A DNA stretch of 64,000 nucleotides, taken from the IMG/VR virus record IMGVR_UViG_3300023184_000026, positions 186,001-250,000 of that record; one strand, given 5' to 3'. Each line of letters begins with the position of its first letter. The first letter of the stretch is position 1. The notes beneath the pieces were generated by a model. It was not told where the DNA came from. It did not search any database and saw only the letters and a list, made by a program, of their open reading frames with translations. A program made the position numbers and the translations under genes. This document shows, piece after piece, positions 2,366 through 23,322 of the stretch.

Positions 2366-2404
2366 CTGGACATTCTATAAAAAGTAAAATACTCTGTTTT
2401 AATT

Positions 2405-2680
2405 ATGAAATATGTAGCCAAAGACATCTATGCATTGGAGCGTGCTGACATTGAATTGTCTTACAATGGCAAGAAAATGGACACTGAACCAACTGACGGT
2501 TATACCAGTACAATGGACTGCATACTGAGTATGCAAAGGCTTGTTAAAATGCTGGACATTGATTGCGAAAAAATTACTGCCGTTTTGATCATCAATCGTG
2601 AAACTACGTTTGTAACCAATCTGAAAGAACTAAGTGCAGTTGTTGACAATTGGCTTCCAAATGATCCTTATTGTTCGTGA
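2405..2680 (+). CDS. hypothetical early protein
   Basis: ORF between near-identical promoter copies at ~2367 and ~2695. Confidence 0.75.
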   Translation: MKYVAKDIYALERADIELSYNGKKMDTEPTDGYTSTMDCILSMQRLVKMLDIDCEKITAVLIINRETTFVTNLKELSAVVDNWLPNDPYCS

Positions 2681-2722
2681 AACTGATTTTGTGCTGGACA
2701 TTCTATAAAAAGTAAACCATAC

Positions 2723-3385
2723 TCATTTCACAAACCTGCCATCTTTTCCACGGGGACATTTACTGGTTAGTCCTCTCCACCATCCAGTCGGAATTTCTTT
2801 TGATTTTTCGTATTTTTTATTAGAAATTCCATCTGTTATCCAACAGCTTCCTAATAGCCACGTGCGAGTTTTTTCTATACTTTCAGCCGACATTGTTTTA
2901 CCCAAATGCATTTTTCTATGATGTTCCTTACGTTCTTCGCTCCATATGGTGCCAGATGCATACGTGTTACCAATCAGTGAATTGGATATTTTATTTCTTG
3001 ATTTGATTGTATGATATCGCCCCTCCATCGGGCCGTTGGCTGGAATTGCTATGTTATACCCTCTCACTATTGAATTGTAAAATTCAACCCAGTGAATTTC
3101 TTTTGAAGTTAAAAGTTCTTTTATTGGCTCACACTCTTCCAAAATTACTTTATCAAAATTATCATATCCATACTTCTTCAAAGCATTATATAATTTTGTC
3201 TGTGCCTTGCACTCATGACGTTTGTATCTTCCCCATCTTGTATAAATATTATCGGCACTTTGTCCGATATACCATTTTCCGTTAGTTTTGTTTCTTAGAC
3301 CGTAGATACCGCAACATTTGGCGTTTGAGGATTTTTTCTTTATTTCGTTCGTAGTATCGTTTTGATTTTGTTCGGTTGTTTGCAT
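2723..3385 (-). CDS. GIY-YIG homing endonuclease with NUMOD3-like repeats
   Basis: GIYGLRNKTNGKWYIGQS, LYNALKKYGYDNF, GYN; C-terminal basic helical repeats and WITDG; start uncertain (nearest in-frame ATG 3385). Confidence 0.9.
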   Translation of the reverse strand: MQTTEQNQNDTTNEIKKKSSNAKCCGIYGLRNKTNGKWYIGQSADNIYTRWGRYKRHECKAQTKLYNALKKYGYDNFDKVILEECEPIKELLTSKEIHWVEFYNSIVRGYNIAIPANGPMEGRYHTIKSRNKISNSLIGNTYASGTIWSEERKEHHRKMHLGKTMSAESIEKTRTWLLGSCWITDGISNKKYEKSKEIPTGWWRGLTSKCPRGKDGRFVK

Positions 3386-3425
3386 CAATTTCTTCTTTCG
3401 TAGTGTATATTTTTTTTCTTCCCAT
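3282..3425 (-). CDS. 47-aa basic protein overlapping the GIY-YIG 5' end in another frame
   Basis: MGRKKIYTTKEEIDANNRTKSKRYYERNKEKILKRQMLRYLRSKKQN; directly after TATTTATTGAT; paralogue at 22530-22703. Confidence 0.7.
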   Translation of the reverse strand: MGRKKIYTTKEEIDANNRTKSKRYYERNKEKILKRQMLRYLRSKKQN

Positions 3426-3524
3426 ATCAATAAATATAGAGGTGAGAGAATAAAAGTGAGAGAAATCGTCATTATTTTTCGTTTTTTTCTGGACTTTTTA
3501 TAAAAACCGTTCATAGTTCTATTC

Positions 3525-4931
3525 ATGACCATTGATACCACGCAATTGATCGGCCCGCAGCCCGACCATGTAAAACGCCTCGTTGATTCTATTTACATCA
3601 ACGGGTTCGCTCTTGACATGAGCGAGACTGGGACTGGTAAGAGTTATTGTGCGGCGGCAGTTGCGAGGGAACTGGGTTGCGATGCCACTCGTCCGCTGGT
3701 GCTCATTGCACCAAAACCGATTTTACCACAATGGGCCAAGATCTTGTCCAGCTTCAATCTCAAGCCATATGTTGCCATCAACTATGAAAAGCTTGGGCGT
3801 GGCAACACCAAATATATGAAGTGGAAGAAACAGAAGTGCATATTGAAGCCATGGGTTGAAAATGCCGTCATGGATGCTCCGGAATTCAATTTGCCCAAGG
3901 ATGCATTGGTCATTCTGGACGAAGGACACAAATGCAAAGGCAATCATAGCACGAATTCATGGATGATGATCATGCTCAAGGAACAGGGCTATAAGGTGCT
4001 TGTGGCGTCTGCTACGCTTGCCACTACGCCAATGGAACTCAAGGCTGCTGGCTATTTGGCAGATCTGCACAGTCTGCATAACTTTGACCACTTTCTGCGT
4101 CAGCATGGTGCGGAGTGGGTTGGTCGGTTTGGTGCCATGTCGTGGGATGCTGCGTCTGTTGCTGCCAAACACAGCATGATGTTGCTCAATGAATATTTCT
4201 TTGACACTCGCAGATGCGCATCGCGTTTGACTGTGGACGACTTTGGTACATTGTTTCCAGAGTCTCATATTGTGGCAGAAGCTTATGACCTTGGAACTGC
4301 CACTGGTAAAATCAATGATATCTATGATGACATGGAAGCTGAAATTGCCAAGTTGGATGAACGTGCTGGCAATTATAGCGAACATATCTTTGCTATCATG
4401 ATGGAAGCTCGTCGTCGTTCTGAACTGTTGAAGGTTCCTTTCTTTGTTGATACCATGGAGGATCTTTATGATGAAGGCAAGAGTGTAGTATTGTTTGTGA
4501 ACTTTCAAGACACTGTTGATGCTATTGTAAAGCGTCTGGAGAAGATGAAGAAGTTCAAGGACACTATTGGATATATTGTTGGCGGGCAACATCATAAAAC
4601 TCGTCAGAAAGATATTGAAGACTTCAATGCTGACAAAAAACGCATCATGGTTGTGAACATCAAGGCTGGAGGCGTAGGCATCAGTCTGCATGACCTCAAC
4701 GGCAATCACGCACGTGCCAGCATCATCAGCCCCAACTTCAGTGCGTTTGAGCTGGTGCAGGCTTTGGGGCGTGTATGGCGTCAGGGTGGCAAGACCAAGT
4801 CGTTTCAGAATATTGTGTATGCAGCTGGCACAATTGAAGAAAAAGCTTGTCATCGCGTTCAGTTTAGAATGAACAACTTGAGCACGCTCAATGATGCTGA
4901 TTTGCGAGAAGGCATCAAAATGTTTGGTTAA
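3525..4931 (+). CDS. superfamily 2 (SNF2-like) helicase/ATPase
   Basis: Walker A ETGTGKS, DEGH box, SAT motif III, GGVGISL, QALGRVWRQG motif VI. Confidence 0.9.
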   Translation: MTIDTTQLIGPQPDHVKRLVDSIYINGFALDMSETGTGKSYCAAAVARELGCDATRPLVLIAPKPILPQWAKILSSFNLKPYVAINYEKLGRGNTKYMKWKKQKCILKPWVENAVMDAPEFNLPKDALVILDEGHKCKGNHSTNSWMMIMLKEQGYKVLVASATLATTPMELKAAGYLADLHSLHNFDHFLRQHGAEWVGRFGAMSWDAASVAAKHSMMLLNEYFFDTRRCASRLTVDDFGTLFPESHIVAEAYDLGTATGKINDIYDDMEAEIAKLDERAGNYSEHIFAIMMEARRRSELLKVPFFVDTMEDLYDEGKSVVLFVNFQDTVDAIVKRLEKMKKFKDTIGYIVGGQHHKTRQKDIEDFNADKKRIMVVNIKAGGVGISLHDLNGNHARASIISPNFSAFELVQALGRVWRQGGKTKSFQNIVYAAGTIEEKACHRVQFRMNNLSTLNDADLREGIKMFG

Positions 4932-4939
4932 GTGAAATT

Positions 4940-4976
4940 GAGTCGGGTTGAGTGGTATCAACCCGACTCTTTTTTT
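4940..4976 (+). terminator. intrinsic terminator
   Basis: GAGTCGGGTTGA-loop-TCAACCCGACTC plus T7. Confidence 0.85.
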
Positions 4977-5022
4977 ATTCTTTCTGCTCGACTTTTTATA
5001 AACTGCTGTCATTGTTATGAGC

Positions 5023-5241
5023 ATGACGCTACAACAAATCAAAGACGCGGTTGAGGCTGGTAAGACGGTGCATTGGGCAACCACGGCATACACGGTCCTC
5101 AAAGACCCGCTGCGTGACGGTACGTTTCAATGGCTCATCGGCTGTGACCACGGACGATACAACCCGAGCTATATCGGGCTGACTTGGATGGACGGCGTGA
5201 CCGTGAATGGTCGCCCCGAAGAATTCTTCATCGGCAAGTGA
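5023..5241 (+). CDS. hypothetical early protein
   Basis: ATG 35 nt after promoter copy at 4988. Confidence 0.75.
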   Translation: MTLQQIKDAVEAGKTVHWATTAYTVLKDPLRDGTFQWLIGCDHGRYNPSYIGLTWMDGVTVNGRPEEFFIGK

Positions 5242-5287
5242 GTTTGATCTCGACTTTTTATATTTTATAAACCATAATATCAGCACG

Positions 5288-5458
5288 ATGAAAAACTACA
5301 AAATCAACGTCACGGTTCAACTGACAGTCGCCGCTGATAATGAGGATGCTCTCAACCAGCTGCTGCATGAGATGGATTACACGTTCACCAGCATTTTGCC
5401 GCGGCGCAAGATCGTGGACGCTAAGTTCACTGATATGCTAGTTGTATCGGAATATTAA
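5288..5458 (+). CDS. small acidic protein, DpnD/PcfM-like pattern
   Basis: MKNYKINVTVQLTVAADNEDA; start re-assigned from promoter spacing. Confidence 0.6.
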   Translation: MKNYKINVTVQLTVAADNEDALNQLLHEMDYTFTSILPRRKIVDAKFTDMLVVSEY

Positions 5459-5542
5459 TAGCTTACAAGATAGGGCGATATCACATAGTATCTATCATTA
5501 TTTTCTCGACTTTTTATATTTCATCAACCATACTTCTATTAT

Positions 5543-5845
5543 ATGAACGCTACATTTACCAAACACGATGATCCTTGTCATGGCTGGCTTGAAGTTCAAG
5601 AAAGTGATATCAAGGAACTTGGCGCAACTGTTAATGATTTTTCAGGATACTCTTATCGCAAAGGCAATCGACTGTTTCTTGAAGAAGATTGCGATGCTAG
5701 CAAGTTTTTTACTCTTTACAAAAACAAGCATGGTGTTTATCCAAACTATGTATCTGAACATCATGATGGTGATTTTCCAGAAGACTATGATCTTGTTTCT
5801 ATTCACCATATTCGCTTTGTGAAAATCACACCCATTGCGGTCTGA
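5543..5845 (+). CDS. conserved-looking phage hypothetical protein
   Basis: DPCHGWLEV...SGYSY...LEEDCD pattern; own promoter. Confidence 0.75.
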   Translation: MNATFTKHDDPCHGWLEVQESDIKELGATVNDFSGYSYRKGNRLFLEEDCDASKFFTLYKNKHGVYPNYVSEHHDGDFPEDYDLVSIHHIRFVKITPIAV

Positions 5846-5886
5846 TTGTATTTGACTTTTTATAAAATCTAATCATACTCTATTTT

Positions 5887-6063
5887 ATGGCTAAATACTC
5901 TGTTACTATTCAATTTGAACGCACTCAAACTATCTTAGTCGAAGCTGACTCTAAAGACGAGGCTATTGAACTGGTGAGTTTCGGCCAGTTTGACGATGAG
6001 CAAATCACCGACACCGAAGATGAAAACGTTGAAATCCTCGGCGCAAGTCTTGACAAATCTTAA
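5887..6063 (+). CDS. 58-aa DpnD/PcfM-like protein (below ORF-track cutoff)
   Basis: MAKYSVTIQFERTQTILVEADSKDEAIELV...; promoter at 5852. Confidence 0.7.
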   Translation: MAKYSVTIQFERTQTILVEADSKDEAIELVSFGQFDDEQITDTEDENVEILGASLDKS

Positions 6064-6077
6064 TCAATATATTATTT

Positions 6078-6272
6078 ATGACTTATAAACGACTGATTGA
6101 AAAATTGCAACTGCTTCCACCTGAGCGTCTAAATGACACTGTGACGGTTTGGAACGCTTGGAATGACGAATTCACTCCTGTCTGTGGCGTTACAGAGAAC
6201 AAAGAAGGTAGTGAAATTCTTGACACAAATGTTCTTGACTATGGACATTTTGTGCTTGAACTGAAAAACTAA
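6078..6272 (+). CDS. hypothetical protein
   Basis: ORF in gene run. Confidence 0.7.
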   Translation: MTYKRLIEKLQLLPPERLNDTVTVWNAWNDEFTPVCGVTENKEGSEILDTNVLDYGHFVLELKN

Positions 6273-6282
6273 ATCTTGACTT

Positions 6283-6489
6283 ATGAATAACAACAATAAT
6301 AATAAACGCGAATTTTTTAGTGACAGCAAGGGCCGCTGGGTGGGCTCTGTTGTGAATGAAGGCAACGGCAAAAAGACATATTCTGATAGCAAGGGTGCTG
6401 TTGTTGGACGTGTGCATGACAACAAGACATTTGATTCAAAGGGTAGTTTCTTTGGCAAAGGAGATATGGGTCAAAGATTGTTCAAGTAG
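6283..6489 (+). CDS. small beta-repeat protein (3x DSKG)
   Basis: FSDSKGRWVG / YSDSKGAVVG / FDSKGSFFG. Confidence 0.65.
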   Translation: MNNNNNNKREFFSDSKGRWVGSVVNEGNGKKTYSDSKGAVVGRVHDNKTFDSKGSFFGKGDMGQRLFK

Positions 6490-6529
6490 TTCTTGCTTTT
6501 TATAAAAACTCTGCTAGATTATATATCAC

Positions 6530-6799
6530 ATGCCAAACACTGAAATTGTAAAAATTCTGATTGTGAATACTGGAGCAACTCCAGTTTCAACTGAAAAGAC
6601 TGAGTTTAGTGCAACTGATGCAACTGCACTACAACAGTTTATTCTGGACGCTATCAATCGTACAGGTAAACAAAGTCATGCATTGCTCAAATATAAAGAT
6701 AAGTTTTGGGTTGCTGATCATACTGCACGCAAGGGTCACAGCAAAGAATACCACAAGCATGCCGTCAAATATCATCCATACATGAAGGAGTTGGCATAA
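6530..6799 (+). CDS. hypothetical early protein
   Basis: Own promoter at 6493. Confidence 0.7.
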   Translation: MPNTEIVKILIVNTGATPVSTEKTEFSATDATALQQFILDAINRTGKQSHALLKYKDKFWVADHTARKGHSKEYHKHAVKYHPYMKELA

Positions 6800-6802
6800 A
6801 AT

Positions 6803-6997
6803 ATGTACACTATCTACGGCGAACGATACAAAAATTATGAACCTATTGTTGATGCAAAAACTAAAGAAGTGCTTGACAATGGTGAACCAAAAACAATAAA
6901 ATTGGGAACTTGGGATAATAAAAAAATTGCAGACAACATGGCAGAAAATATCAAAAACACCGTGCCACACAGAAGTTGGAAAATTTGGGTAGAATAA
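6803..6997 (+). CDS. hypothetical protein
   Basis: Starts 3 nt after upstream stop. Confidence 0.65.
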   Translation: MYTIYGERYKNYEPIVDAKTKEVLDNGEPKTIKLGTWDNKKIADNMAENIKNTVPHRSWKIWVE

Positions 6998-7033
6998 GCT
7001 GGACTTTTTATAAAAACTAATCATACTCCTTTT

Positions 7034-7231
7034 ATGCCGAAATATTCTGTTATCGTCCAATCCCTACGCACCGAAACTATTGAAATTGACGCTGAAAACA
7101 AAGCTGCGGCTGTTGCGCTTGTGAAAGAAGGTTGCGGCGAAAAACTACCTCAATCTTTGAGCGAACAAATTCACTTCGCAGAAACAGAAGGTGATTATTT
7201 TGAAATTCTTTCCGTAGTCTTGGTAAAATAA
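7034..7231 (+). CDS. DpnD/PcfM-like small protein
   Basis: MPKYSVIVQSLRTETIEIDAENKAAAVALV; paralogue of 5887-6063. Confidence 0.7.
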   Translation: MPKYSVIVQSLRTETIEIDAENKAAAVALVKEGCGEKLPQSLSEQIHFAETEGDYFEILSVVLVK

Positions 7232-7279
7232 ACAAAAATAAGCTGGACTTTTTATAAAAACTAACCATACTAACAGACG

Positions 7280-7612
7280 ATGAATATTAAACCACTAAGC
7301 AAGAAAATCTATGACAAAGCCGTTTCTCTGGGTATCATCCAGATTATACTTAAATTCTCTGGAGGCAACGACGAAGGGTATTTGACTGTGTATGTTAATA
7401 CACAAGACGGGTTTGAGAGCAACACCGAGTTTGAACAAGAAATTGAAGGTTGGGCTTGGGAAGCGTATGGTTATAGCGGTGCTGGCGACGGCAACGACTA
7501 TGGCGACGACATTGTGTATGACCTATTGAACAAAACCGCAACGGCTAGTTCATGGTCTATGCAACGCACCGAAGGATACTCTGAGGATGCTGCGTTGGAA
7601 ATTGCTGAATAA
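7280..7612 (+). CDS. DUF6878-like acidic protein
   Basis: FSGGNDEG motif, GAGDGNDYG. Confidence 0.65.
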   Translation: MNIKPLSKKIYDKAVSLGIIQIILKFSGGNDEGYLTVYVNTQDGFESNTEFEQEIEGWAWEAYGYSGAGDGNDYGDDIVYDLLNKTATASSWSMQRTEGYSEDAALEIAE

Positions 7613-7620
7613 AACTCAAA

Positions 7621-8013
7621 ATGACACCACTCAAACACGCCGAGTCCACTGCACGCAAATGGGGCGGGCATTGGCAAGACTATATTGCTATTCACGACTG
7701 GTTTGATGCGACGAAAGTATATACTGGCGATTGGACTCATAGAGCACTTCGCCATCATAGCGCGGGTATCCAGTGGGCAGTTGAAGAGTTTGGTCATGCA
7801 ATCGTCAATTCGAGTAATCAAACCATCGCCGTCAAGTTGATCGCAGAGCAGCATTTGATGGAAGATTGTGGGTTCATTCCTACGCCAAAGGACTGGTTGA
7901 AGTGTTTGGGTGCTCATCCCGAGCCGTGGATGCTCAAGGTAGGAAAGGTTTATCAGACTCAAAGTCTTTCAATCACACCAACCATCGACGGTCTGAAAGT
8001 TGCAGTGCGATAA
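7621..8013 (+). CDS. DUF6915-like His-rich protein
   Basis: HAESTARKWGG...IHDWFD...HRALRHH...EQHLMEDCGFIP. Confidence 0.7.
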   Translation: MTPLKHAESTARKWGGHWQDYIAIHDWFDATKVYTGDWTHRALRHHSAGIQWAVEEFGHAIVNSSNQTIAVKLIAEQHLMEDCGFIPTPKDWLKCLGAHPEPWMLKVGKVYQTQSLSITPTIDGLKVAVR

Positions 8014-8328
8014 AAAAGATTATGTTTTCTGTTGGCAGCAGAATATATATGTGTATAGTGATGGTAGTTCTTTAACAATAATATACAGATAAAAAAGTGG
8101 CTCCTACGATGAACCCACGGTGCGCCTTTCGCGCCGCCAGAATAATGCAAGCAACGCAAGAAGCAGCTAAGATAATGGTGGAATGATGATGAGCAGAAAA
8201 AAATGTAAAAAATAAAGCACGCTTGTGAAAATAGTGGGCTGTGAGCCGAATGGAAAATCAGCACATATGTAAGAAAGTTATTGACAAAATTAATAAAATC
8301 TGTATAGTTATTTCAAATCAATTTATAT

Positions 8329-8402
8329 TGCAGGATGGTGTAAAAGTAGCACGCCACGCTCATAATGTGGAGACAATCGCGCGATTCGGTTTCCTGCAAC
8401 CA
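8329..8402 (+). tRNA. tRNA-Met(CAT), atypical T-loop
   Basis: TGCAGGA/TCCTGCA acceptor, CCACG-CTCATAA-TGTGG anticodon arm, T-loop CGCGATT, ACCA end. Confidence 0.75.
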
Positions 8403-8473
8403 ATTTAAAAAGAGACGATCAAAAGGTCGTCTTTTTTGTTGACTTTTATAAAAAGTAGTTCATACTTTATATA

Positions 8474-8641
8474 ATGAAACGCTACACAAGTAAGAAACAA
8501 GGATATGTTATTGTGAATGGTGAATATGTGCCTGTCAAGCAAGTGAAATTTCTTGACATTGAAGAAGACATTCAAGGCATTGATGTGATGACCTTTGAAT
8601 ATAAAGGTGAAACTCGCAAGTCGTATGTTGTGATTCGCTAA
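8474..8641 (+). CDS. 55-aa hypothetical early protein
   Basis: MKRYTSKKQGYVIVNGEYVPV...; promoter at 8439. Confidence 0.7.
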   Translation: MKRYTSKKQGYVIVNGEYVPVKQVKFLDIEEDIQGIDVMTFEYKGETRKSYVVIR

Positions 8642-8705
8642 AACTATGAACTATTCTATTCAAAATAACTTGACTTTTTATAAAATCTAATCATACTGAT
8701 ACACG

Positions 8706-9095
8706 ATGAAACTCATTACCAAAGAAATTGATTCTAAACTGACTGCTGCTGGCGACACTGGCACCAAGGTCATCTGCAAGTTCTTTAACCCCTGTGGTGC
8801 GGGCACGTGGCTCATCACAGGTCGTGACCCAGAAGAGCCAGACATTCTGTGGGGTGCTGCTGACATTGGCTTTGGTTGCGTGGAGTTTGGCACCATCAGC
8901 CTAAGCGAACTGGAGAATGTGAAGCTCAGGTTTGGGCTCAAGATTGAGCGTGATCTGCATTGCAGCGTTGAAGGTGCAGACGTGAACACGTTTCTTGACC
9001 GCGACAGTCTGTGCGGCTTGCAGGAAACCGAAGATCGCGGTGCGCACGAGGCCGTGAACACGTTTCTTGACCGCGACAGTCTGTGCGGCGTCTAA
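8706..9095 (+). CDS. DUF2958-like protein with duplicated C-terminus
   Basis: KFFNPCGAGTWLIT...GAADIGFGCVEFGTISLSELE...IERDLH. Confidence 0.8.
   Translation: MKLITKEIDSKLTAAGDTGTKVICKFFNPCGAGTWLITGRDPEEPDILWGAADIGFGCVEFGTISLSELENVKLRFGLKIERDLHCSVEGADVNTFLDRDSLCGLQETEDRGAHEAVNTFLDRDSLCGV
8981..9089 (+). repeat. perfect 37-bp direct repeat x2 with 35-bp spacer
   Basis: CGTGAACACGTTTCTTGACCGCGACAGTCTGTGCGGC at 8981-9017 and 9053-9089. Confidence 0.95.
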
Positions 9096-9096
9096 A

Positions 9097-9258
9097 ATGA
9101 ACGACAAAATTCATGCCGCTATTGGCAACTGTCCGAAATGCGGAAAACAGTTTTGGTTAAATGATGTTCCCCTCAAGGGGTTCTGTTGGGGCACCGAAGA
9201 AAAACCACACGTCCAAGTTGTAAAAAAAATTCCATCCAGCGTTCAACCTTACAAATAA
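9097..9258 (+). CDS. small zinc-ribbon protein
   Basis: CPKCG...CWG...H. Confidence 0.55.
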   Translation: MNDKIHAAIGNCPKCGKQFWLNDVPLKGFCWGTEEKPHVQVVKKIPSSVQPYK

Positions 9259-16955: not shown

Positions 16956-16990
16956 TTGACTTTTATAAAAACTCTGACATAGTTCTAAAC

Positions 16991-17353
16991 ATGAACAAGA
17001 CCGACAATATTGATGCTCTGAAAAATGATATGCCGCTCACGGATTTTATTCGTGGCGTGAACAAGAAAATCAGTGATTATTGGCAACGCAACAACTTCAC
17101 GCACAATGATGCTCCCGTGGTCATGGTTGACAGCGTGGGCAAGCGTTATGCCAAACTTGCTAAGTGTGAGCGCGTGCCGCATCGCACTGGTCCGCTCAAA
17201 GCCACTGGCGTTTATTGCTTCTATGACGTAGCCACTGGCGATTTGCTCAAAGGCACTTGGAAGGCTCCTGTTGCCAAAGGCGTGCGCGGCAACGTCAAAG
17301 ATGCCAACGTGCTGACCAAGTTCACTGAACATGGTCCTGCGTATCTTCGCTAA
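16991..17353 (+). CDS. conserved-looking phage hypothetical protein
   Basis: GKRYAKL...VYCFYD...GDLLKGTWKAPVAKGVRGN. Confidence 0.75.
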   Translation: MNKTDNIDALKNDMPLTDFIRGVNKKISDYWQRNNFTHNDAPVVMVDSVGKRYAKLAKCERVPHRTGPLKATGVYCFYDVATGDLLKGTWKAPVAKGVRGNVKDANVLTKFTEHGPAYLR

Positions 17354-17422
17354 AAATAGAGTTGCTTTTTTATAAAAAATCATACATTATTATTATTTCA
17401 GTCAAACAACAACACAATACAT

Positions 17423-17719
17423 ATGATGGCCAATCCTCCCAACAACACTATCTTTCAGTATGTTCGCAACCGGCGACGGCAAAAAGTCGGCGTGGTTGTA
17501 GCTGTGAAGCGGCACGACAATACAATTGGCTTTGGTTACAGCCTGTGCGCTGTTAATCTTGGCGACAAGTTCAACCCAGAACTGGCGTTGAACATTGCAC
17601 TTGGTCGTGCCGAAGCGTTTCCGCACTTTGCTGATGAAATTCCAAGCAGCGTAGAAAATGATTGGAGTGAAATTCTGCATCGTTCTGAGCGTTATTTCAA
17701 GGACGTTGAGATTGTGTAA
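17423..17719 (+). CDS. hypothetical protein
   Basis: GYSLC...DKFNPELALNIALGRA pattern. Confidence 0.7.
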   Translation: MMANPPNNTIFQYVRNRRRQKVGVVVAVKRHDNTIGFGYSLCAVNLGDKFNPELALNIALGRAEAFPHFADEIPSSVENDWSEILHRSERYFKDVEIV

Positions 17720-17812
17720 ATAAATTTCAATGATGGGGTGCGCATATCAACTCACGCACACTTATTTTATTTTCATCTTGACTTTTATAAAAACTCTGTC
17801 ATTGTTCATATC

Positions 17813-18058
17813 ATGAAAGCATCCATTCTTCCCAACGACATTTCTGTTGTTTACTCATATCGTCCAGATGTTGCTCGTGAATATCTAACCATTGATGTTC
17901 CAAATGGTTGGGACGATGTCAAGAAGATCAGCAAAAAAGTGTTGAGCTATGATGGTCGCAAATTTACTTTTACTGGTTGGAACAGCGACAGCAATCAATG
18001 CTATTTTGCTCGCAGCTTGCATGAAACAATTGCGCCAATCGCAACTTTTGTGAAATAA
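17813..18058 (+). CDS. hypothetical early protein
   Basis: Start from promoter 17778 spacing. Confidence 0.7.
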   Translation: MKASILPNDISVVYSYRPDVAREYLTIDVPNGWDDVKKISKKVLSYDGRKFTFTGWNSDSNQCYFARSLHETIAPIATFVK

Positions 18059-18096
18059 GTGTTGCTTTTTATAAAAATTCTGTCACTGTTTTAAGT

Positions 18097-18291
18097 ATGA
18101 ACTCCTCCATCACCTTCACCGAAAAGGGTCTGTTTCTGCTCGCCGTCACTGCTCTGGAGCTTGACAGCACGCCCCAATACAGTGTTGATTATGACAATAT
18201 GACAATCAACACCGATGATGTTGATTATCTCGTGGATCTGCTGCATGAGCAGGGTGTTTTTGAGTTTATCTGTATATCGCGGCGATGCTGA
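18097..18291 (+). CDS. hypothetical early protein
   Basis: Promoter 18062. Confidence 0.65.
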   Translation: MNSSITFTEKGLFLLAVTALELDSTPQYSVDYDNMTINTDDVDYLVDLLHEQGVFEFICISRRC

Positions 18292-18406
18292 TGGCGATCA
18301 TGACCAGTTTCGCACGGATGCTGAGGCTGATGCCGACGCTCTTGCGTCTGCGGGTATGGGAGATGACGAAAGCTATGGTTATTACGGCGGCGGGGAGGAC
18401 GAGTAA
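18272..18406 (+). pseudogene. orphan 3' fragment of an acidic phage gene
   Basis: GDADGDHDQFRTDAEADADALASAGMGDDESYGYYGG, out of frame with the upstream ORF and lacking an ATG/promoter. Confidence 0.45.
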
Positions 18407-18407
18407 C

Positions 18408-18599
18408 ATGTATCTTGTAGGCGACAGATTATCATTTCCTCATAACTGTGCAACAAGCACAGGCACTGTTGCAGTTATTCATGAAAATCAAAATATGTCA
18501 TTGACATATTGGATTGATGAAGACAATGGTGAAAATGTGCTGCTTTTTGATGATGCTATAAATGTGTCACTCATTGAGCCAGAATTTCTTGACTTTTGA
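18408..18599 (+). CDS. hypothetical protein
   Basis: ATG 1 nt after stop of preceding fragment. Confidence 0.6.
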   Translation: MYLVGDRLSFPHNCATSTGTVAVIHENQNMSLTYWIDEDNGENVLLFDDAINVSLIEPEFLDF

Positions 18600-18688
18600 T
18601 TTTTCGTTGGGTTCATAAGAAAAGAGGAGGCATAAAAAACCTCCCCTTTTAGCTTGCTTTTTATAAAAACTCTGTCATTGTTTTAAGT

Positions 18689-18913
18689 ATGAACTTCAAC
18701 ACCGCATATCTCCTCGCCAACCAAGTTGCCCGAAAAGAAAAAGTGTCAATGATAGTTGTGCTGGAAGGCATTCATCGCGACGAACGCGCGCCAGAAGACA
18801 GCCACGGCTTTTGCCCAGCAAGCGCAGTTTCTATGCTGTATCGCTTCGGCAAGGTTGTTGCTATGATTCCGGCAGGAGGCACGCGGGTATCCGCCGCCAA
18901 ACTAAATAAATAA
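18689..18913 (+). CDS. hypothetical early protein
   Basis: Promoter 18654. Confidence 0.7.
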   Translation: MNFNTAYLLANQVARKEKVSMIVVLEGIHRDERAPEDSHGFCPASAVSMLYRFGKVVAMIPAGGTRVSAAKLNK

Positions 18914-18956
18914 AATAAGAGTTGCTTTTTATAAAAATTCTGATATTGTTTTAAGT

Positions 18957-19190
18957 ATGAACTTCAGCACTCACCAAATAGAAATCCTCAACGCTGCTGG
19001 CTACAACTTTCGTTGGAACAAATACACATCGGAATTTGTTTGCAACAAAAACGCAGAGGTTGGAATTTACAGTCACACTAGCGACAGTTTTGTTGCCAGA
19101 ATTCTTGACTGGGATCGTGAGACTGGCAACGAATTTTTTGTTTATCATTATTTCAAGACGTTTCAAGAAATGAAATCATTTCTGACATAA
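18957..19190 (+). CDS. hypothetical early protein
   Basis: Promoter 18922. Confidence 0.7.
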   Translation: MNFSTHQIEILNAAGYNFRWNKYTSEFVCNKNAEVGIYSHTSDSFVARILDWDRETGNEFFVYHYFKTFQEMKSFLT

Positions 19191-19194
19191 TTTT

Positions 19195-19413
19195 ATGAAT
19201 AATAATTTTACACGAATTTATTCAGCATCTGGCAAAGAAATTTTTCCCAGAGCTGGTCTTTGTTTGAACGCTGGAACCATTGTTCAAAAAAATAGTGGTT
19301 TTGTTACATTGGTCAAGTCTGCCACAATTCAAGCAAATAAAGTTACTGTGCTTGGAGATGGTCAGGGCAGAGACAAAAAAGAAATCTCTTTCTCACTGGT
19401 TGAATCAGTTTGA
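19195..19413 (+). CDS. hypothetical protein
   Basis: Stop TGA inside next TTGACT. Confidence 0.65.
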   Translation: MNNNFTRIYSASGKEIFPRAGLCLNAGTIVQKNSGFVTLVKSATIQANKVTVLGDGQGRDKKEISFSLVESV

Positions 19414-19444
19414 CTTTTATAAAAAGTCCGATATTGTTTTAAGC

Positions 19445-19627
19445 ATGATATCACCAAAAGTTGATGTAAAACCAATTGACTTCCACGGGGAAGCATATTA
19501 CACCGTCTTCATTGACGGCGAAGAGATGACCGGAGCCTATTGTGGTCTCCTGCCCGTCAAGCATCGTAACGATGCTTGGGAGGTTTCCGAAGAAATTCTG
19601 AGCGACATGAACGTTGTTGATGATTGA
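19445..19627 (+). CDS. hypothetical early protein flanked by identical promoter copies
   Basis: AGTTTGACTTTTATAAAAAGTCCGATATTGTTTTAAG on both sides. Confidence 0.7.
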   Translation: MISPKVDVKPIDFHGEAYYTVFIDGEEMTGAYCGLLPVKHRNDAWEVSEEILSDMNVVDD

Positions 19628-19664
19628 GTTTGACTTTTATAAAAAGTCCGATATTGTTTTAAGT

Positions 19665-19928
19665 ATGAACCTCACCAAAGCAGATTTTCAAAACGACTTG
19701 AACAAAGCAACTGCTATGGGTGCAGCCGCTTTTAAACGTGGCATCTTGTGTGCTTGTGCATCTGATGTTGAGTTTAGTTATTTCATCAAGAAATACAGCA
19801 CAGCTGATTGGAAATTTACCAAGCAACTGTTGAAGCTCATGGATGCTTGGCAGCGTGGTTATACGGTTGAATTCAATTCAATTATTGCCACTTGGGAAGC
19901 TGAACTATCATCTAAAAATTTAAAATAA
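19665..19928 (+). CDS. hypothetical early protein
   Basis: Promoter 19630. Confidence 0.7.
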   Translation: MNLTKADFQNDLNKATAMGAAAFKRGILCACASDVEFSYFIKKYSTADWKFTKQLLKLMDAWQRGYTVEFNSIIATWEAELSSKNLK

Positions 19929-19966
19929 GTCTCGCTTTTTATAAAAATTCTGTCACTATCTTATTT

Positions 19967-20125
19967 ATGAACTCTAAATCAATTATCACTGGCGTTGAAA
20001 TCGGCAACATTGTGTTTGAGCTGGACGAAGCTTGTGCTGCTACGAGACTAACCGAAGACGAGCATAAGTTCGCAGTTGATGCAGTTGTTGCTGCTTGGAA
20101 AGCTCAACTATCATCCAAAAAATAA
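19967..20125 (+). CDS. 52-aa hypothetical early protein
   Basis: MNSKSIITGVEIG...AAWKAQLSSKK; promoter 19932. Confidence 0.65.
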   Translation: MNSKSIITGVEIGNIVFELDEACAATRLTEDEHKFAVDAVVAAWKAQLSSKK

Positions 20126-20169
20126 AAATAAGTCTCGACATTCATAAAAACTCTGGCATTATCTATAAT

Positions 20170-20391
20170 ATGAACTCTTGGAAAACTGAAGTTTGCACAA
20201 TGTATCAAGGCAGCGAATCTTGGGCGACCAATTCTTTGCGATTTGCTTCAAAGATTGAAGCTGAAAAAGCTGGGCATGAATTGCTTTCTCGTTGGTATGT
20301 TCCAATCAAAAGTCGTGCTGCACAATCAGAAGATGCAGTGAATTATGTTTTTGATGACGCCACTGGCCGTCCAGCACCAATATCTGTTTGA
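20170..20391 (+). CDS. hypothetical early protein
   Basis: WATNSLRFA...ELLSRW; promoter 20134. Confidence 0.7.
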   Translation: MNSWKTEVCTMYQGSESWATNSLRFASKIEAEKAGHELLSRWYVPIKSRAAQSEDAVNYVFDDATGRPAPISV

Positions 20392-20418
20392 CATTTATAA
20401 AACAATTAATATAATCTT

Positions 20419-20616
20419 ATGTCATATATATCTTTAATCACCGCATTTTTTATTATCTGGAGTTTGTTTGGACTGTGTGTGCTATTCAATCTTGAAGCTG
20501 GCAGCAAACCGTCACTTCGTTTGGCTATTGTGATTGGTCCAATCATCATGATTTTTGGACTTGTTATTATTGGCTGTTTGTTGCTGATTGAAAAAACAAC
20601 AGAATGGACAAAATAG
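20419..20616 (+). CDS. small two-TM membrane protein
   Basis: Two hydrophobic stretches. Confidence 0.65.
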   Translation: MSYISLITAFFIIWSLFGLCVLFNLEAGSKPSLRLAIVIGPIIMIFGLVIIGCLLLIEKTTEWTK

Positions 20617-20653
20617 TCTTGATTTTTATAAAAACTCTGGCATAGTTAGTGTC

Positions 20654-20785
20654 ATGAAGATCAACAACACAATCAAACTTCGCAGCGTGTTCAGCTCTGG
20701 CATGAATCTGGGCAATCAGATTCACAAGACCCGCAAGGGCAAAGGCAGTTATTCTCGCAAAAATCGCAACAACAAGTGGCAGTAA
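20654..20785 (+). CDS. ArfA-like small basic protein
   Basis: HKTRKGKGSYSRK matches the KGKGSY-RK signature of alternative ribosome-rescue factor A; promoter 20619. Confidence 0.55.
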   Translation: MKINNTIKLRSVFSSGMNLGNQIHKTRKGKGSYSRKNRNNKWQ

Positions 20786-20828
20786 AAATAGAGTTGCTTT
20801 TTATAAAAAAATAGTCAGTATCTATAAT

Positions 20829-21116
20829 ATGAAAACCGTAGATGATCGCAATGAATCTCAGAAAATCACCCACAAGTGGGCAATCGTTGCCAAGGACAAG
20901 TATATGAGCGGCTGGGGTGGAGCAACAGGTGGAGCCAGCCGTGTGGCGTGGGCTGTGGAATCATATGCTAGTGTTGACAAGCTATTGAGCTGGGTCAAGT
21001 CGCGAAATGAAATGAAATATGTTAATGTCGTAAATTTGAATGATTATCGTGCTCCACGCAGCACAGCACACTTTCATGTTTATGTTGCAAATGCCAGTCA
21101 TCCTGCGTTTGACTAA
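20829..21116 (+). CDS. conserved-looking phage hypothetical protein
   Basis: DKYMSGWGGA...RNEMKYV. Confidence 0.75.
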   Translation: MKTVDDRNESQKITHKWAIVAKDKYMSGWGGATGGASRVAWAVESYASVDKLLSWVKSRNEMKYVNVVNLNDYRAPRSTAHFHVYVANASHPAFD

Positions 21117-21160
21117 AAAATAGAGTTGCTTTTTATAAAAACTCTGTCAGTATTCTAAAC

Positions 21161-21577
21161 ATGAAGATCACCAAGCACACCACAATTGCTCTGACAATCA
21201 GCGAGATCAAGCAAAGTCTGTCTGACTATCAATCCGAGATCATGCATGAAATGCTGCTTGAGTATTTCAATCTTCCATATAATTCTGACAAATTTTGTGG
21301 ATTGTCATATGACGAAAAACAAAAACTTATGGAATGGTCCAATTTGCTTGTGAAAGGCACTCATAGTGAGGAGTTTAATAAACTCAGCAATGGTCGTTGG
21401 ATTCATACGCCATCATTTAACAGCGGATTTGTTGAATTGGTTGAATCTTTTCCACATATGTTCTTGACAGTGGATTTGTTTGATGGTCTAGATGCCAAGG
21501 ATTTTAGCGTTAAAATTGTGCATAACAATGGCGATGAGACATTCGTCAACAGTGAAAATATTCTCAGCAACATTTGA
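21161..21577 (+). CDS. hypothetical early protein
   Basis: Promoter 21126. Confidence 0.7.
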   Translation: MKITKHTTIALTISEIKQSLSDYQSEIMHEMLLEYFNLPYNSDKFCGLSYDEKQKLMEWSNLLVKGTHSEEFNKLSNGRWIHTPSFNSGFVELVESFPHMFLTVDLFDGLDAKDFSVKIVHNNGDETFVNSENILSNI

Positions 21578-21620
21578 TTATTATCTCGACTTTTTATAAA
21601 AACCAGTCATAGTTTACAAC

Positions 21621-21974
21621 ATGAACTCTATCTTTTCTCCTGATCTGGTAAACAAGCCCACGGTGGTATATGGTCCACAGGTTGGCGACATATTGGTCAG
21701 CATATCTGGCTATGAGGCCAGCATTGCTAGTTGGGCCAAGGTTGTGGGTGTGACTGGCAAGAGCGTCAAGATTGTGCGCTTGCCCGCCGACAACAAATAC
21801 ACTGGCGGCGGTGGCATGGAATGGATCAGCACGCCTGCCACGGACCGCATCAAGGGCGAGACCGAAACGAAACGTTTTACTGCTGATGGCGACGGCTATA
21901 GGGTCAAGAACAACAGCTACAGCAACTATTATGTTTGGAGTGGCAAGCCAATTGAGTGCTACAACTGGCATTGA
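21621..21974 (+). CDS. hypothetical early protein
   Basis: VGDILVSISGYE...VVGVTGKSV; promoter 21586. Confidence 0.75.
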   Translation: MNSIFSPDLVNKPTVVYGPQVGDILVSISGYEASIASWAKVVGVTGKSVKIVRLPADNKYTGGGGMEWISTPATDRIKGETETKRFTADGDGYRVKNNSYSNYYVWSGKPIECYNWH

Positions 21975-22663
21975 TCTTTCAAGAAATGGCGTTTCATTGC
22001 CTCTGAGAGAGCAACCCTGTTGCTCTCATCAGAGTAATGTTTGAACAGTGCGTCGGATATTTTCTTGTTGCGTTCCTTACTGAATGTGCGACCTTTCATC
22101 CTTTCTGACATTTTTAGTCTTTCTTCTTCGGCAATGACCCTTCCACATTTTTTATTCTGCTCAGGGGTTCTTCGCTTCCGTGCATCGCTTAGTGCTTTTC
22201 TGTGAGCATCACTAAATTTTTTTCCTTTTTTTGCCGCACTTATATTTTTTCGATGTTCCGGACTGTTAGTGGCTCCTGATCTAAGGTCTCCACCATAACC
22301 GCCATCCGTTAGATTATATCCATTGTTCTTTGAGTCATAATACTTTATCCACACTATTTCTTTATTGCTGAGTTCATCTTTGTCGCATTCTTCCAGTATT
22401 ACTTTGTTGAAATTGTTTATTCCATATTTTTTGAGGGCTCGATAGATTTTAGGCTGAGTTTTACAACTTACATTATCGTATGCAGTTTTCCACCTATCGT
22501 GGATATCAACACTCAGTCCGATATACCATTTATGTGGTTTGAGTTTGTTCTGTAGTCCGTATATTCCTATCTTTTTTGACATGGTATCGGTTACGAGCAT
22601 TTTCTCTTTCTCTGTTGACATTTTTCCAGTAACTTCGCATTCTGTAAATTCTGTTGAGTTCAT
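21959..22663 (-). CDS. GIY-YIG homing endonuclease with NUMOD3-like repeats
   Basis: GIYGLQNK...WYIGLS, RALKKYG, GYNLTDGG, SPEHRKNISAAKKG; likely start ATG 22582 (MSKKIGIY). Confidence 0.9.
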   Translation of the reverse strand: MNSTEFTECEVTGKMSTEKEKMLVTDTMSKKIGIYGLQNKLKPHKWYIGLSVDIHDRWKTAYDNVSCKTQPKIYRALKKYGINNFNKVILEECDKDELSNKEIVWIKYYDSKNNGYNLTDGGYGGDLRSGATNSPEHRKNISAAKKGKKFSDAHRKALSDARKRRTPEQNKKCGRVIAEEERLKMSERMKGRTFSKERNKKISDALFKHYSDESNRVALSEAMKRHFLKDQCQL

Positions 22664-22703
22664 CGAGGTGTTCCTTTGTTCGGTTTAGTTTTTTTCTTCC
22701 CAT
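22530..22703 (-). CDS. 57-aa basic protein overlapping the GIY-YIG 5' end in another frame
   Basis: MGRKKLNRTKEHLDELNRIYRMRSYWKNVNRERENARNRYHVKK...; after TATTTATTGAT. Confidence 0.7.
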   Translation of the reverse strand: MGRKKLNRTKEHLDELNRIYRMRSYWKNVNRERENARNRYHVKKDRNIRTTEQTQTT

Positions 22704-22775
22704 ATCAATAAATAGTATTTACTTACAAAAAACCTTACAAAATTAGTTTTTATTTTAGGTTGAGTGTTCATAGTT

Positions 22776-22810
22776 GAGGGAGCAGCGTGGTGGCTGCTCC
22801 CTCTTTTTTT
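22776..22810 (+). terminator. intrinsic terminator
   Basis: GAGGGAGCAGC-loop-GCTGCTCCCTC plus T7. Confidence 0.85.
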
Positions 22811-22855
22811 ACTTTGCCGCTTGACTTTTATAATAAATAAATCATTATCTTAAAT

Positions 22856-23074
22856 ATGAAATTTGTTATCTTCTGCAATGCCGCCAATTTGAAAACCTAC
22901 AACAACACTTGGATTGTTGTAGCTGCCAACACATCATATAAAGTGTTGAACATTCAATTTGATGAATATGGCATCATACGTTCAATTGTTTTTTCTGTGA
23001 GCAATGACATTGTTGCTTTTGAACGCAGCAATATTACTGGAAAATTTGGCAGCAATTTTGCTTTGAGTGCTTGA
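22856..23074 (+). CDS. hypothetical early protein
   Basis: Promoter 22821. Confidence 0.65.
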   Translation: MKFVIFCNAANLKTYNNTWIVVAANTSYKVLNIQFDEYGIIRSIVFSVSNDIVAFERSNITGKFGSNFALSA

Positions 23075-23106
23075 CATTTTATAATAAGTAAGTCAGTATT
23101 TATAAC

Positions 23107-23322
23107 ATGAAATCCAAGAAACTTACCAAGACATACTTTGAACTCTACACGATTGGTGCCACAAGTGGTTGGGGAGAATATGACGATGAAACCTTGGACA
23201 CCACACTCAAAACACTCAAATCTGCTATGAAAGAAGCAAAAATTCTGGCAGATGAAGGTCAAACTGTCAAGATCAAGCAGGTCAAAGAATTGCTGTTTAT
23301 CAAAGGTGAAAAGGCTGCTTGA
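23107..23322 (+). CDS. hypothetical early protein
   Basis: Promoter 23071. Confidence 0.7.
   Translation: MKSKKLTKTYFELYTIGATSGWGEYDDETLDTTLKTLKSAMKEAKILADEGQTVKIKQVKELLFIKGEKAA

What the first reader, a model, noticed from the sequence alone, without database searches (positions are those of the whole stretch)
2367..23110. Neighbouring promoter copies are near-identical: signature of cassette gain/loss by recombination at the repeat
Seen: variants come in adjacent pairs flanking single genes. CTGGACATTCTATAAAAAGTAAA occurs at ~2367 and ~2695; CTCGACTTTTT(T)ATATTT at ~5250 and ~5505; AATAAGCTGGACTTTTTATAAAAACTAA at ~6993 and ~7237; TGACTTTTT...AATTTAGTTCA at ~12591 and ~12798; an identical 37-mer AGTTTGACTTTTATAAAAAGTCCGATATTGTTTTAAG at 19407 and 19627; GCTTGACwTTTATAATAA-like at ~22819 and ~23069. 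Known: repeated early-promoter elements in some T4-like phages mediate excision and exchange of small gene modules. Inference: an integron-like accessory array with no integrase, in which the promoter itself is the crossover site.
Basis: partly seen in the sequence, partly recalled or inferred. Interest (0 to 1): 0.75.

Follow-up and report, generated by a model that had tools for sequence, protein, structure and literature searches.

The report
Promoter repeats shuffle phage gene cassettes
In an uncultured 297-kb freshwater T4-like phage, about 46 copies of one early-promoter sequence separate small genes of unknown function. Related phage genomes show that single genes were gained, lost and moved by recombination inside those promoter copies, a process already described in T4-type phages.

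Summary
The window carries 46 same-strand copies of a roughly 45-nt sigma-70-like promoter between 1149 and 23900, plus one more at 26772. Only about 16 further copies occur in the rest of the 297-kb genome.

Four haplotypes from other lake metagenomes are 85-98% identical and collinear, but differ by at least 17 single-cassette gains, losses or replacements and one cassette translocation. In the dense array, 16 of 18 breakpoints lie inside promoter copies. Junction promoters are scar-free chimeras: left part from the left copy, right part from the right copy.

Crossovers map to at least four mutually exclusive positions between the -35 box and ATGAA. That points to homologous rather than site-specific exchange. 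The genome has no tyrosine or serine recombinase but does encode a RecA/UvsX homologue.

This is the PeSL "modular shuffling" known from T4-type phages, in a variant form. There is no general stem-loop and no Shine-Dalgarno sequence, and the start codon sits a fixed 7 nt after the -10 box, so the mRNAs are probably leaderless. Mini-circles could not be tested. Flanking-copy similarity does not predict which cassettes vary.

The parts
1149..23900 (+). Array of 46 same-strand promoter copies, each directly upstream of a small ORF or a tRNA. Model starts: 1149, 1411, 2044, 2356, 2684, 3479, 4977, 5239, 5495, 5841, 6482, 6989, 7233, 8428, 8659, 10915, 11048, 11392, 12579, 12786, 13029, 14286, 14651, 15296, 15678, 15888, 16155, 16945, 17351, 17767, 18051, 18643, 18911, 19399, 19619, 19921, 20124, 20374, 20608, 20783, 21115, 21575, 22810, 23060, 23308, 23846. 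In each copy the -35 box starts about 11 nt after the model start and the ATG about 46 nt after it.
   Evidence: PWM and nhmmer scans of the whole genome; enrichment over shuffles.
15296..23360 (+). Dense sub-array: 23 copies in 8 kb and about 25 ORFan genes of 43-141 aa. This is the hyperplastic core where almost every structural difference to relatives lies at a promoter copy.
   Evidence: Cassette strings; HSP chain gaps; no Pfam hits for 19 of 20 ORFs; third-codon-position excess of substitutions, 288 against 153 and 125.
2366..2716 (+).
   Evidence: family D14; mutual best matches. This cassette is present in L010 and L031.
5241..5536 (+).
   Evidence: family D13. Window 5025-5503 is absent from L010 and L031, where a single promoter sits at the junction.
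6976..7271 (+). That ORF is a 41%-identical paralogue of ORF 5887-6063, which has a similar promoter of its own.
   Evidence: The cassette is absent from L010 and L031, with a 34-nt HSP overlap at the junction.
12579..12840 (+).
   Evidence: The cassette is absent from G003 and G002.
19399..19668 (+).
   Evidence: 92% identity over 48 nt. Present in G001/G003, absent from G002/G004.
22810..23110 (+).
   Evidence: Present in all relatives, so this similar pair shows no polymorphism.
18911..19447 (+). Two-gene cassette (ORFs 18957-19190 and 19195-19413) unique to the window. In G001/G003 one chimeric promoter replaces it, with the crossover inside the shared 11-nt AT core.
   Evidence: 91 of 94 positions explained by one switch.
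21115..21623 (+). Cassette with ORF 21161-21577 (138 aa). Present in the window and G002/G004, absent from G003/G001 and from G005. The two absences have different crossover positions.
   Evidence: (interval 18..20 against 23..31 relative to the core), so these are independent events or a later conversion.
15888..16203 (+). Cassette with ORF 15936-16163 (75 aa), unique to the window.
1411..2092 (+). Cassette with ORF 1458-2051 (197 aa), absent from L010 and L031.
17767..18099 (+). Two promoter copies (17767, 18051) that are insertion slots in relatives. One extra cassette sits at the first slot in G003. One (G003) or two (G002) extra cassettes sit at the second slot, including the translocated 74-aa ORF.
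23308..23360 (+). Last copy of the dense array. Relatives carry 1.2-1.4 kb of four extra cassettes at exactly this promoter.
   Evidence: HSP overlaps of 17-33 nt.
3525..4931 (+). Helicase gene (468 aa) whose ATG sits at the standard offset from promoter copy 3479. This shows that the element also drives a larger gene.
   Evidence: paralogue elsewhere in the genome.
10133..12156 (+). Six tRNA genes inside the array. Copies 10915 and 11392 precede tRNAs rather than ORFs.
   Evidence: The order of neighbouring cassettes differs in G003.
2723..3541 (-). GIY-YIG homing-endonuclease-like gene on the opposite strand: a second, independent mobile element in the array.
   Evidence: Not at this place in L010 and L031, where homologues sit at other positions.
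21959..22663 (-). Second GIY-YIG/NUMOD3 endonuclease-like gene, replaced by other sequence in all relatives.
   Evidence: skipped in contigs of runs X8 and X15.
9782..10843 (-). Opposite-strand 353-aa ORF (weak RAP and zinc-ribbon hits), absent from G003.
26772..26822 (+). Outlying weaker promoter copy downstream of the array.

Best explanation
The repeat is the early promoter of a distant T4-superfamily phage: a TTGACT or TTGCTT -35 box, an AT-palindromic spacer, a TG-extended -10 box, and the start codon 7 nt further on. Almost every small accessory gene in this region has its own copy, so the region is a string of cassettes made of one promoter plus one ORF. Because the copies share 20-45 nt of near-identity, the phage's own homologous-recombination machinery (a UvsX/RecA homologue is encoded) or template switching can cross over between any two copies, within one genome or between co-infecting genomes. 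Each crossover recreates one intact promoter, so genes are deleted, inserted, replaced or moved without scars and stay expressed. Shown: the repeat family, its clustering, the fixed ATG offset, cassette polymorphism, chimeric junctions, varied crossover points and the absence of a site-specific recombinase. Inferred: promoter activity, early timing, leaderless transcripts, the enzymes involved and circular intermediates.
For: - Repeat family and clustering.
- ORF-opening ATG 25-28 nt after the core in 91 of 111 distinct copies, 61 of them at exactly 26 nt.
- ORFs are coding, shown by a third-position substitution excess with p = 3e-18.
- Relatives are 85-98% identical and collinear but differ by whole cassettes.
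- In W against G003 across the dense array, 16 of 18 window-side breakpoints fall in promoter windows that cover about 18% of that stretch (binomial p of about 1e-10 by my arithmetic).
- Twelve clean junctions are explained at 85-94 of 94 positions by a single left-to-right switch inside the promoter.
- The switch intervals are mutually exclusive (-7..-6, 12..13, 18..20, 23..31).
- A 74-aa ORF cassette about 95% identical sits at two different slots, and its homology ends inside the flanking promoters.
- Per-cassette identity changes between 85% and 98% at promoter borders.
- Each of two haplotype structures was recovered 100% identical from two different samples.
- No Phage_integrase or Resolvase match; RecA/UvsX is present.
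- The same mechanism is published for T4-type phages (PMC2839356, PMC4122927).
Against: - In this array the intergenic space is almost nothing but promoter, so selection for intact genes alone would also place surviving breakpoints there. Only 3-5 promoter-less gene junctions exist as an internal control.
- Outside the dense array (7.4-14.5 kb and beyond 23.4 kb) most indels are not at these promoters.
- Flanking-copy similarity does not predict polymorphism.
- No circles, raw reads or transcripts could be examined. Only assembled contigs were available, and most of their joints have short sides.
- Promoter activity is inferred from sequence only.
Confidence: 0.85

Rival explanations
1. The promoters are alike only because promoter function is under selection. 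On this view the indels arose by illegitimate recombination anywhere, and only those at gene borders survived.
For: Intergenic space is essentially the promoter itself. Outside the dense array, indels occur at other short AT-rich motifs or at homing endonuclease genes.
Against: Junctions are exactly in register and recreate one intact promoter with no lost or added bases. Switch points lie in stretches shared by both parental copies. The homology of the translocated cassette ends inside the promoters on both sides. No event was seen at the promoter-less gene junctions (16523/16530, 18291/18285, 19190/19195).
Confidence: 0.07
2. An unrecognised site-specific recombinase or nuclease acts on the palindromic TTTTTATAAAAA core, as an integrase acts on attC sites.
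For: The core is a perfect AT palindrome conserved in nearly all copies. Four or five crossover intervals include it.
Against: At least seven clean crossover intervals lie wholly outside the core, and several exclude each other. No tyrosine or serine recombinase was found in the genome.
Confidence: 0.03
3. Neighbouring copies are alike because promoter-plus-gene units were tandemly duplicated and the genes then diverged.
For: One paralogous pair exists (5887-6063 and 7034-7231, 41% aa), each member with a matching promoter. The 3' coding ends at 19861-19975 and 20064-20178 are 76% alike (family D15).
Against: All-against-all blastp finds no other paralogy among the array's ORFs. The genes enclosed by the near-identical pairs are unrelated to their neighbours.
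Confidence: 0.03
4. The cassette differences are artefacts of short-read metagenome assembly across repeats or across mixed strains.
For: Relatives' contigs end inside the array. Logan contigs break at promoter copies and give short-sided promoter-to-promoter joints.
Against: Exact shared stretches are 37 nt or shorter, below read length. G001 equals G003 and G002 equals G004 at 100% over 10-15.6 kb from different samples. The window's structure is held at 0.99-1.00 of sampled words in three runs. Unique cassettes are real coding sequence, not collapsed repeats.
Confidence: 0.02

Closest known systems
PeSL (promoter-early stem-loop) elements of T4-type phages RB49 and phi1 (Arbiol et al. 2010, PMC2839356)
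   Same: Repeated sigma-70-like early promoters with an AT-rich upstream part that holds the stop codon of the upstream gene. They are concentrated in a hyperplastic region, each upstream of an ORFan. Indels and replacements between close relatives lie at the elements. A single chimeric element is left after a deletion. The host phage belongs to the T4 superfamily.
   Different: Here there is no general stem-loop or terminator and no Shine-Dalgarno sequence. The ATG is fused at a fixed 7 nt after the -10 box. The spacer is an AT palindrome rather than G/C-rich stems. Density is higher, with 23 copies in 8 kb. Promoter and terminator activity and mini-circles were shown experimentally for RB49 and phi1, not here.
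PeSL and PmSL elements of nt-1/KVP40 and PST/T4 (Comeau et al. 2014, PMC4122927)
   Same: A -35 consensus of TTGYVH in nt-1/KVP40 covers both the TTGACT and TTGCTT forms seen here. Uninterrupted runs of ORFs are each separated by an element, with insertions, replacements, deletions and an ORF displacement between close relatives. A TGCTT-containing subclass exists in both.
   Different: Those elements carry stem-loops just upstream of the promoter and a Shine-Dalgarno sequence. No MotA or AsiA homologue was detected here, so a middle-mode reading of the TTGCTT class is unsupported (inconclusive).
Integron gene-cassette arrays
   Same: A one-directional array of small accessory gene cassettes bounded by repeats, with cassette gain, loss and reordering.
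   Different: No integrase and no attI or attC sites. Crossover positions vary. Every cassette has its own promoter instead of sharing Pc.
Free-standing homing endonucleases (Seg-like GIY-YIG) of T4-type phages
   Same: Two GIY-YIG genes on the opposite strand lie between array genes and are present, absent or relocated among relatives.
   Different: They are a separate source of variation. Their borders are mostly not at the promoter repeats.

Membership tests
PeSL elements of T4-type phages | Sigma-70-like early promoter (-35 and -10 boxes at about 17-nt spacing) with an AT-rich upstream region that holds the upstream gene's stop codon | tested here: met
   TTGACT or TTGCTT, then 16 nt containing TG, then CAnnnT or TAGAGT. 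An AAAATAA or AAAATAG stop context lies just upstream. This is sequence evidence only; activity was not measured.
PeSL elements of T4-type phages | Stable stem-loop within or next to the promoter that acts as a terminator or attenuator | tested here: not met
   Folding of 43 copies gives a mean z of about 0 against shuffles, and most MFEs are between 0 and -5 kcal/mol. Only about four copies are preceded by a terminator-like hairpin (8408-8437, about 18610-18640, 22776-22803, 23831-23854).
PeSL elements of T4-type phages | Shine-Dalgarno sequence and start codon at the 3' end of the element | tested here: not met
   The start codon is present at a fixed offset, but there is no SD sequence. Only 7 nt separate the -10 box from the ATG. 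Genome-wide, only 12 of 154 long ORFs have an SD-like motif.
PeSL elements of T4-type phages | Concentrated in hyperplastic regions, mostly upstream of ORFans | tested here: met
   47 of 59 + strand hits lie in 26 kb of a 297-kb genome. 19 of 20 array ORFs have no Pfam match.
PeSL elements of T4-type phages | Indels and replacements between close relatives bounded by the elements, leaving a chimeric element | tested here: met
PeSL elements of T4-type phages | Excised mini-circles carrying one ORF and one chimeric element | not testable with these tools
   All runs that hold the sequence are kept as assembled contigs, which drop rare forms. 'Goes back' joints were seen, but with short sides and unknown intervening letters.
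T4 superfamily of myoviruses | T4-type core genes (Gp23 capsid, family-B DNA polymerase, UvsX/RecA, rIIA, sheath, baseplate wedge) | tested here: met
   Gp23 at 258 bits; DNA polymerase phrog_262, best hit Microcystis phage Mel-JY01 at 42%, then KVP40-like phages and cyanophages at about 30%; RecA at 190 bits; rIIA and sheath; baseplate wedge.
Integrons | IntI tyrosine recombinase with attI and attC sites, and promoter-less cassettes | tested here: not met
   No Phage_integrase or Resolvase match in the genome, with positive controls. Crossover points vary. Each cassette has its own promoter.

The most novel reading that the evidence does not exclude
The mobile unit may be a distinct, minimal form of regulatory cassette: a promoter fused directly to the start codon, with no 5' UTR, no Shine-Dalgarno sequence and no terminator. 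Each gene would then be made as a leaderless mRNA. One 45-nt repeat would serve as the complete expression signal and as the recombination site, so any ORF dropped behind it is expressed. That would explain why every small gene needs its own copy and why the array is so dense.
Probability: 0.5. Interest if true: 0.6.

Novelty: new variant of a known kind. Interest (0 to 1): 0.5.

Why it matters
The result extends promoter-mediated modular shuffling from a few cultured coliphages and vibriophages to a very distant, uncultured freshwater jumbo T4-like phage. It documents the process in natural populations at nucleotide resolution: four haplotypes, at least 17 cassette events and one translocation, with crossover points mapped. 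The stem-loop and Shine-Dalgarno parts of the published element are dispensable for the shuffling, so homology in the promoter alone is enough. If the transcripts are leaderless, the array is a compact model of how phages keep a fast-turnover pool of early (probably host-takeover or anti-defence) genes always expressed. It also gives a simple sequence handle, the repeat itself, for fishing accessory genes of this phage group out of metagenomes.

Tried and rejected
- Megablast of the array against GenBank phages found nothing.
- My first regex and fuzzy scans for the motif were too strict or behaved badly. I replaced them with a PWM and then an HMM.
- A three-way L/R site labelling of junctions was too noisy in unrelated flanks. 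I replaced it with a best-single-switch score.
- Reads: only Logan contigs exist for the 23 runs found. Contigs break at the repeats and most joints have sides of 20-37 nt. They show population variants (for example, cassettes 19965-20169 and 21157-21618 skipped, and the endonuclease gene skipped), but they cannot show circles or transcript starts.
- MotA and AsiA were not found, but the controls did not ring either, so this is inconclusive.
- The nearest cultured relative by DNA polymerase, Microcystis phage Mel-JY01, has no copy of the promoter pattern, so it gives no host clue.
- I tested whether similar flanking copies mark polymorphic cassettes. The result was not significant.
- Tandem gene duplication as a general cause was rejected.
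- A general stem-loop was rejected.

Full report
**Source of the window.** The window is bases 186001-250000 of a 297,258-bp IMG/VR virus record judged complete. The record encodes a T4-type major capsid protein (Gp23, 258 bits) and a family-B DNA polymerase. The polymerase's best cultured match is Microcystis phage Mel-JY01 at 42% aa, followed by KVP40-like vibriophages and cyanophages at about 30%. It also encodes a RecA/UvsX homologue, rIIA and a tail sheath, and baseplate wedge proteins. It is therefore a very distant member of the T4 superfamily. The runs that hold it are freshwater and lake metagenomes. No GenBank phage is close at the nucleotide level.

**The observation.** The 37-mer occurs exactly at 19407 and 19627, the 28-mer at 6993 and 7237, and the 23-mer at 2366 and 2694. 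These belong to one large family. A relaxed core pattern gives 30 hits against 2.5 expected. An iterated HMM gives 64 hits in the genome, 47 of them on the + strand between window 1149 and 26772.

The consensus reads: stop codon of the upstream gene inside an A-rich stretch, then TTGACT or TTGCTT, then an AT palindrome (TTTTTATAAAAA), then CTCTG, one further base and the -10 box CAnnnT (or TAGAGT). That is a sigma-70-type promoter with a TG-extended -10 box.

Adjacent copies are more alike than random order predicts: mean identity 0.692 against 0.637, z = 3.4, 0 of 5000 permutations. The best match of 10-12 of the 47 copies is a neighbour, against about 2 expected. The excess holds at separations 1 and 2 and then fades. 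The six quoted pairs are mutual best or second-best matches, but only 19399/19619 is truly near-identical (92%). The others are 75-81%.

**Anatomy.** In 91 of 111 distinct copies from the window and three relatives, an ATG that opens an ORF of at least 30 codons lies 25-28 nt after the core. In 61 of them it lies at exactly 26 nt, which is 7 nt after the -10 hexamer. No single offset exceeds 1.2% in a random control.

These ORFs are real genes. Substitutions between orthologous cassettes fall on codon positions 1, 2 and 3 as 153, 125 and 288 (p = 3e-18). Nineteen of twenty tested have no Pfam match. There is no room for a leader and no Shine-Dalgarno motif. Genome-wide, only 12 of 154 long ORFs have an SD-like motif. 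The transcripts are therefore predicted to start at or 1 nt before the AUG; this is inference, not measurement.

The element also precedes two tRNA genes (copies 10915 and 11392) and a 468-aa helicase gene. That fits a promoter rather than a translation signal. The copies do not fold better than shuffles (mean z about 0). Only about four are preceded by a terminator-like hairpin.

**Relatives.** An exact scan of IMG/VR with the promoter pattern found contigs carrying many copies. Five contigs (handles G001-G005) and two loci (L010, L031) align to the window at 77-98% nucleotide identity. G001 and G003 are 100% identical over 9.9 kb, and G002 and G004 over 15.6 kb, although they come from different samples. 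So there are four independent haplotypes over the dense array (the window, G001/G003, G002/G004 and G005), plus L010/L031 for the left part. Each of two structures was assembled twice.

**Cassette comparison.** I cut every sequence at its promoter copies and clustered the pieces in between, which gives cassette strings. Shared cassettes keep their order, but single cassettes come and go. Over window 15.3-23.4 kb I count at least 17 gains, losses or replacements. One 74-aa ORF cassette sits after cassette 29 in G002/G004 but after cassette 58 in G001/G003. Its two copies are about 95% identical, and the homology stops inside the flanking promoters on both sides.

In the left part, window 1459-2052, 5025-5503 and 7037-7241 are missing from L010 and L031, again with a single promoter at the junction. 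Pairs 1 and 6 enclose conserved cassettes.

**Breakpoints.** In the chain of alignments between the window and G003 across the dense array, 16 of 18 window-side breakpoints lie in promoter windows, which cover about 18% of that stretch. The two aligned blocks overlap by 12-48 nt, that is by one shared promoter. By my arithmetic the binomial chance is about 1e-10.

For each junction I compared the single promoter of the shorter genome with the two flanking promoters of the longer one. Twelve clean cases are explained at 85-94 of 94 positions by a single switch from the left copy to the right copy. The clearest case is the G003 promoter between cassettes 31 and 33. It equals window copy 18911 up to the AT core and window copy 19399 from there on.

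The switch intervals, counted from the A of the core, include -7..-6, -4..7, 12..13, 14..17, 18..20 and 23..31. Several of these exclude each other. The same cassette (21161-21577) is missing from G003 and from G005 with different switch points. That implies independent events or a later conversion.

Identity between haplotypes also jumps between 85% and 98% from cassette to cassette, changing at promoter borders. This is the expected trace of allele exchange by crossovers at the repeats.

**Mechanism.** The varied crossover points, the scar-free in-register junctions, the absence of tyrosine and serine recombinases and the presence of UvsX/RecA all point one way. They indicate homology-driven exchange between promoter copies, either within a genome or between co-infecting genomes.

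Which intermediate is used (unequal crossover, double crossover with a donor genome, or an excised circle that re-integrates) cannot be told from these data. Only assembled contigs were available. They show further population variants at promoter borders and the absence of the endonuclease gene, but most joints have short sides.

The higher similarity of neighbouring copies fits short-range gene conversion or local duplication. It does not significantly mark the cassettes that vary: mean flanking identity is 0.735 against 0.704 for small cassettes, and the test over all cassettes gives p = 0.22. Tandem gene duplication explains one case at most, the paralogues 5887-6063 and 7034-7231 with matching promoters.

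**Limits.** In the dense array the intergenic space is the promoter, so selection for intact genes would by itself favour breakpoints there. The internal control is small: no event was seen at the three to five promoter-less gene junctions. Outside the dense array, many indels lie elsewhere. Some are at opposite-strand homing endonuclease genes and some at other short AT-rich repeats. Promoter activity, timing and leaderless starts are inferred from sequence.

**Comparison with what is known.** The phenomenon was described as PeSL-mediated modular shuffling in RB49 and phi1 (PMC2839356) and in PST/T4 and nt-1/KVP40 (PMC4122927). Those reports include chimeric elements after deletion, ORF displacement and PCR-detected mini-circles.

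The present array shares the promoter, the AT-rich upstream part with the stop codon, the location upstream of ORFans in a hyperplastic region, and the breakpoints. It lacks two named parts of a PeSL, the stem-loop and the Shine-Dalgarno sequence, and it fuses the start codon to the promoter. I therefore file it as working like a PeSL, as a new variant rather than a plain member. 'Integron-like' is an analogy only.

**Verdict.** The mechanism is known in kind. The variant features (a minimal, probably leaderless promoter-ATG module, very high density, and natural haplotypes from lakes) are of moderate interest.

Noticed in passing
window 832-999: Five or more tandem 21-nt units (period 21, containing GCTATATAC-like cores) lie just upstream of the array. 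A similar 22-mer is at 24393-24414. Possibly iterons, an origin or protein-binding sites.
   Followed up: no
window 2723-3541 (-), 21959-22663 (-), 9782-10843 (-): Three opposite-strand genes interrupt the one-directional array. Two are GIY-YIG endonuclease-like with similar N-termini (3371-3436 against 22649-22714, 77%). The third has weak RAP and zinc-ribbon hits. Among relatives each is absent, replaced or found at another place, so a second mobile-element type is at work.
   Followed up: partly
whole genome (G000); e.g. upstream of ORFs at G000 27320, 37482, 60369, 255536, 284485: Almost no Shine-Dalgarno motifs genome-wide (12 of 154 long ORFs). Many structural genes have a TATTTATA or ATATTTATATA-like motif only a few nt before the ATG, suggesting very short leaders for late genes too and an SD-poor host.
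   Followed up: partly
window ~24567-24579 and ~26601-26619: Larger insertions in relatives (0.7-3.1 kb in G002 and G005) are bounded by other short AT-rich repeats (TTTTTGTATATAT, and TAATTTATAGTAA-like), not by the early promoter. These may be another promoter class that also serves as a crossover site.
   Followed up: partly
window 19861-19975 vs 20064-20178: The repeat here extends about 60 nt into the 3' coding ends of two neighbouring genes (76% identity over 115 nt), so some exchanges could create chimeric C-termini.
   Followed up: no
loci L013, L016, L017, L020, L022 (IMG/VR contigs): More distant viral contigs carry 3-6 same-strand copies of the promoter family with little or no other nucleotide similarity to this genome. 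The element therefore marks a wider phage group.
   Followed up: partly
window 3525-4931 and G000 144009-145652: The array's helicase gene has a 41%-identical paralogue 42 kb upstream in the same genome.
   Followed up: no
window 13677-14300: A 207-aa ORF has weak DUF3293 and S-adenosylmethionine-lyase-family hits, below the family cut-off for the latter. It is a possible anti-restriction function among the early genes.
   Followed up: no
window 33706-38978: A cluster of sugar-modifying enzymes downstream of the array: a GlcNAc-type glycosyltransferase, a carbamoyltransferase and an HtrL/YibB-like protein.
   Followed up: no
window 10133-12156; G003 locus L032: The six-tRNA cluster lies inside the array. 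The order of the neighbouring ORF cassette (11096-11311) relative to the tRNAs differs between the window and G003, at only about 71% identity.
   Followed up: partly
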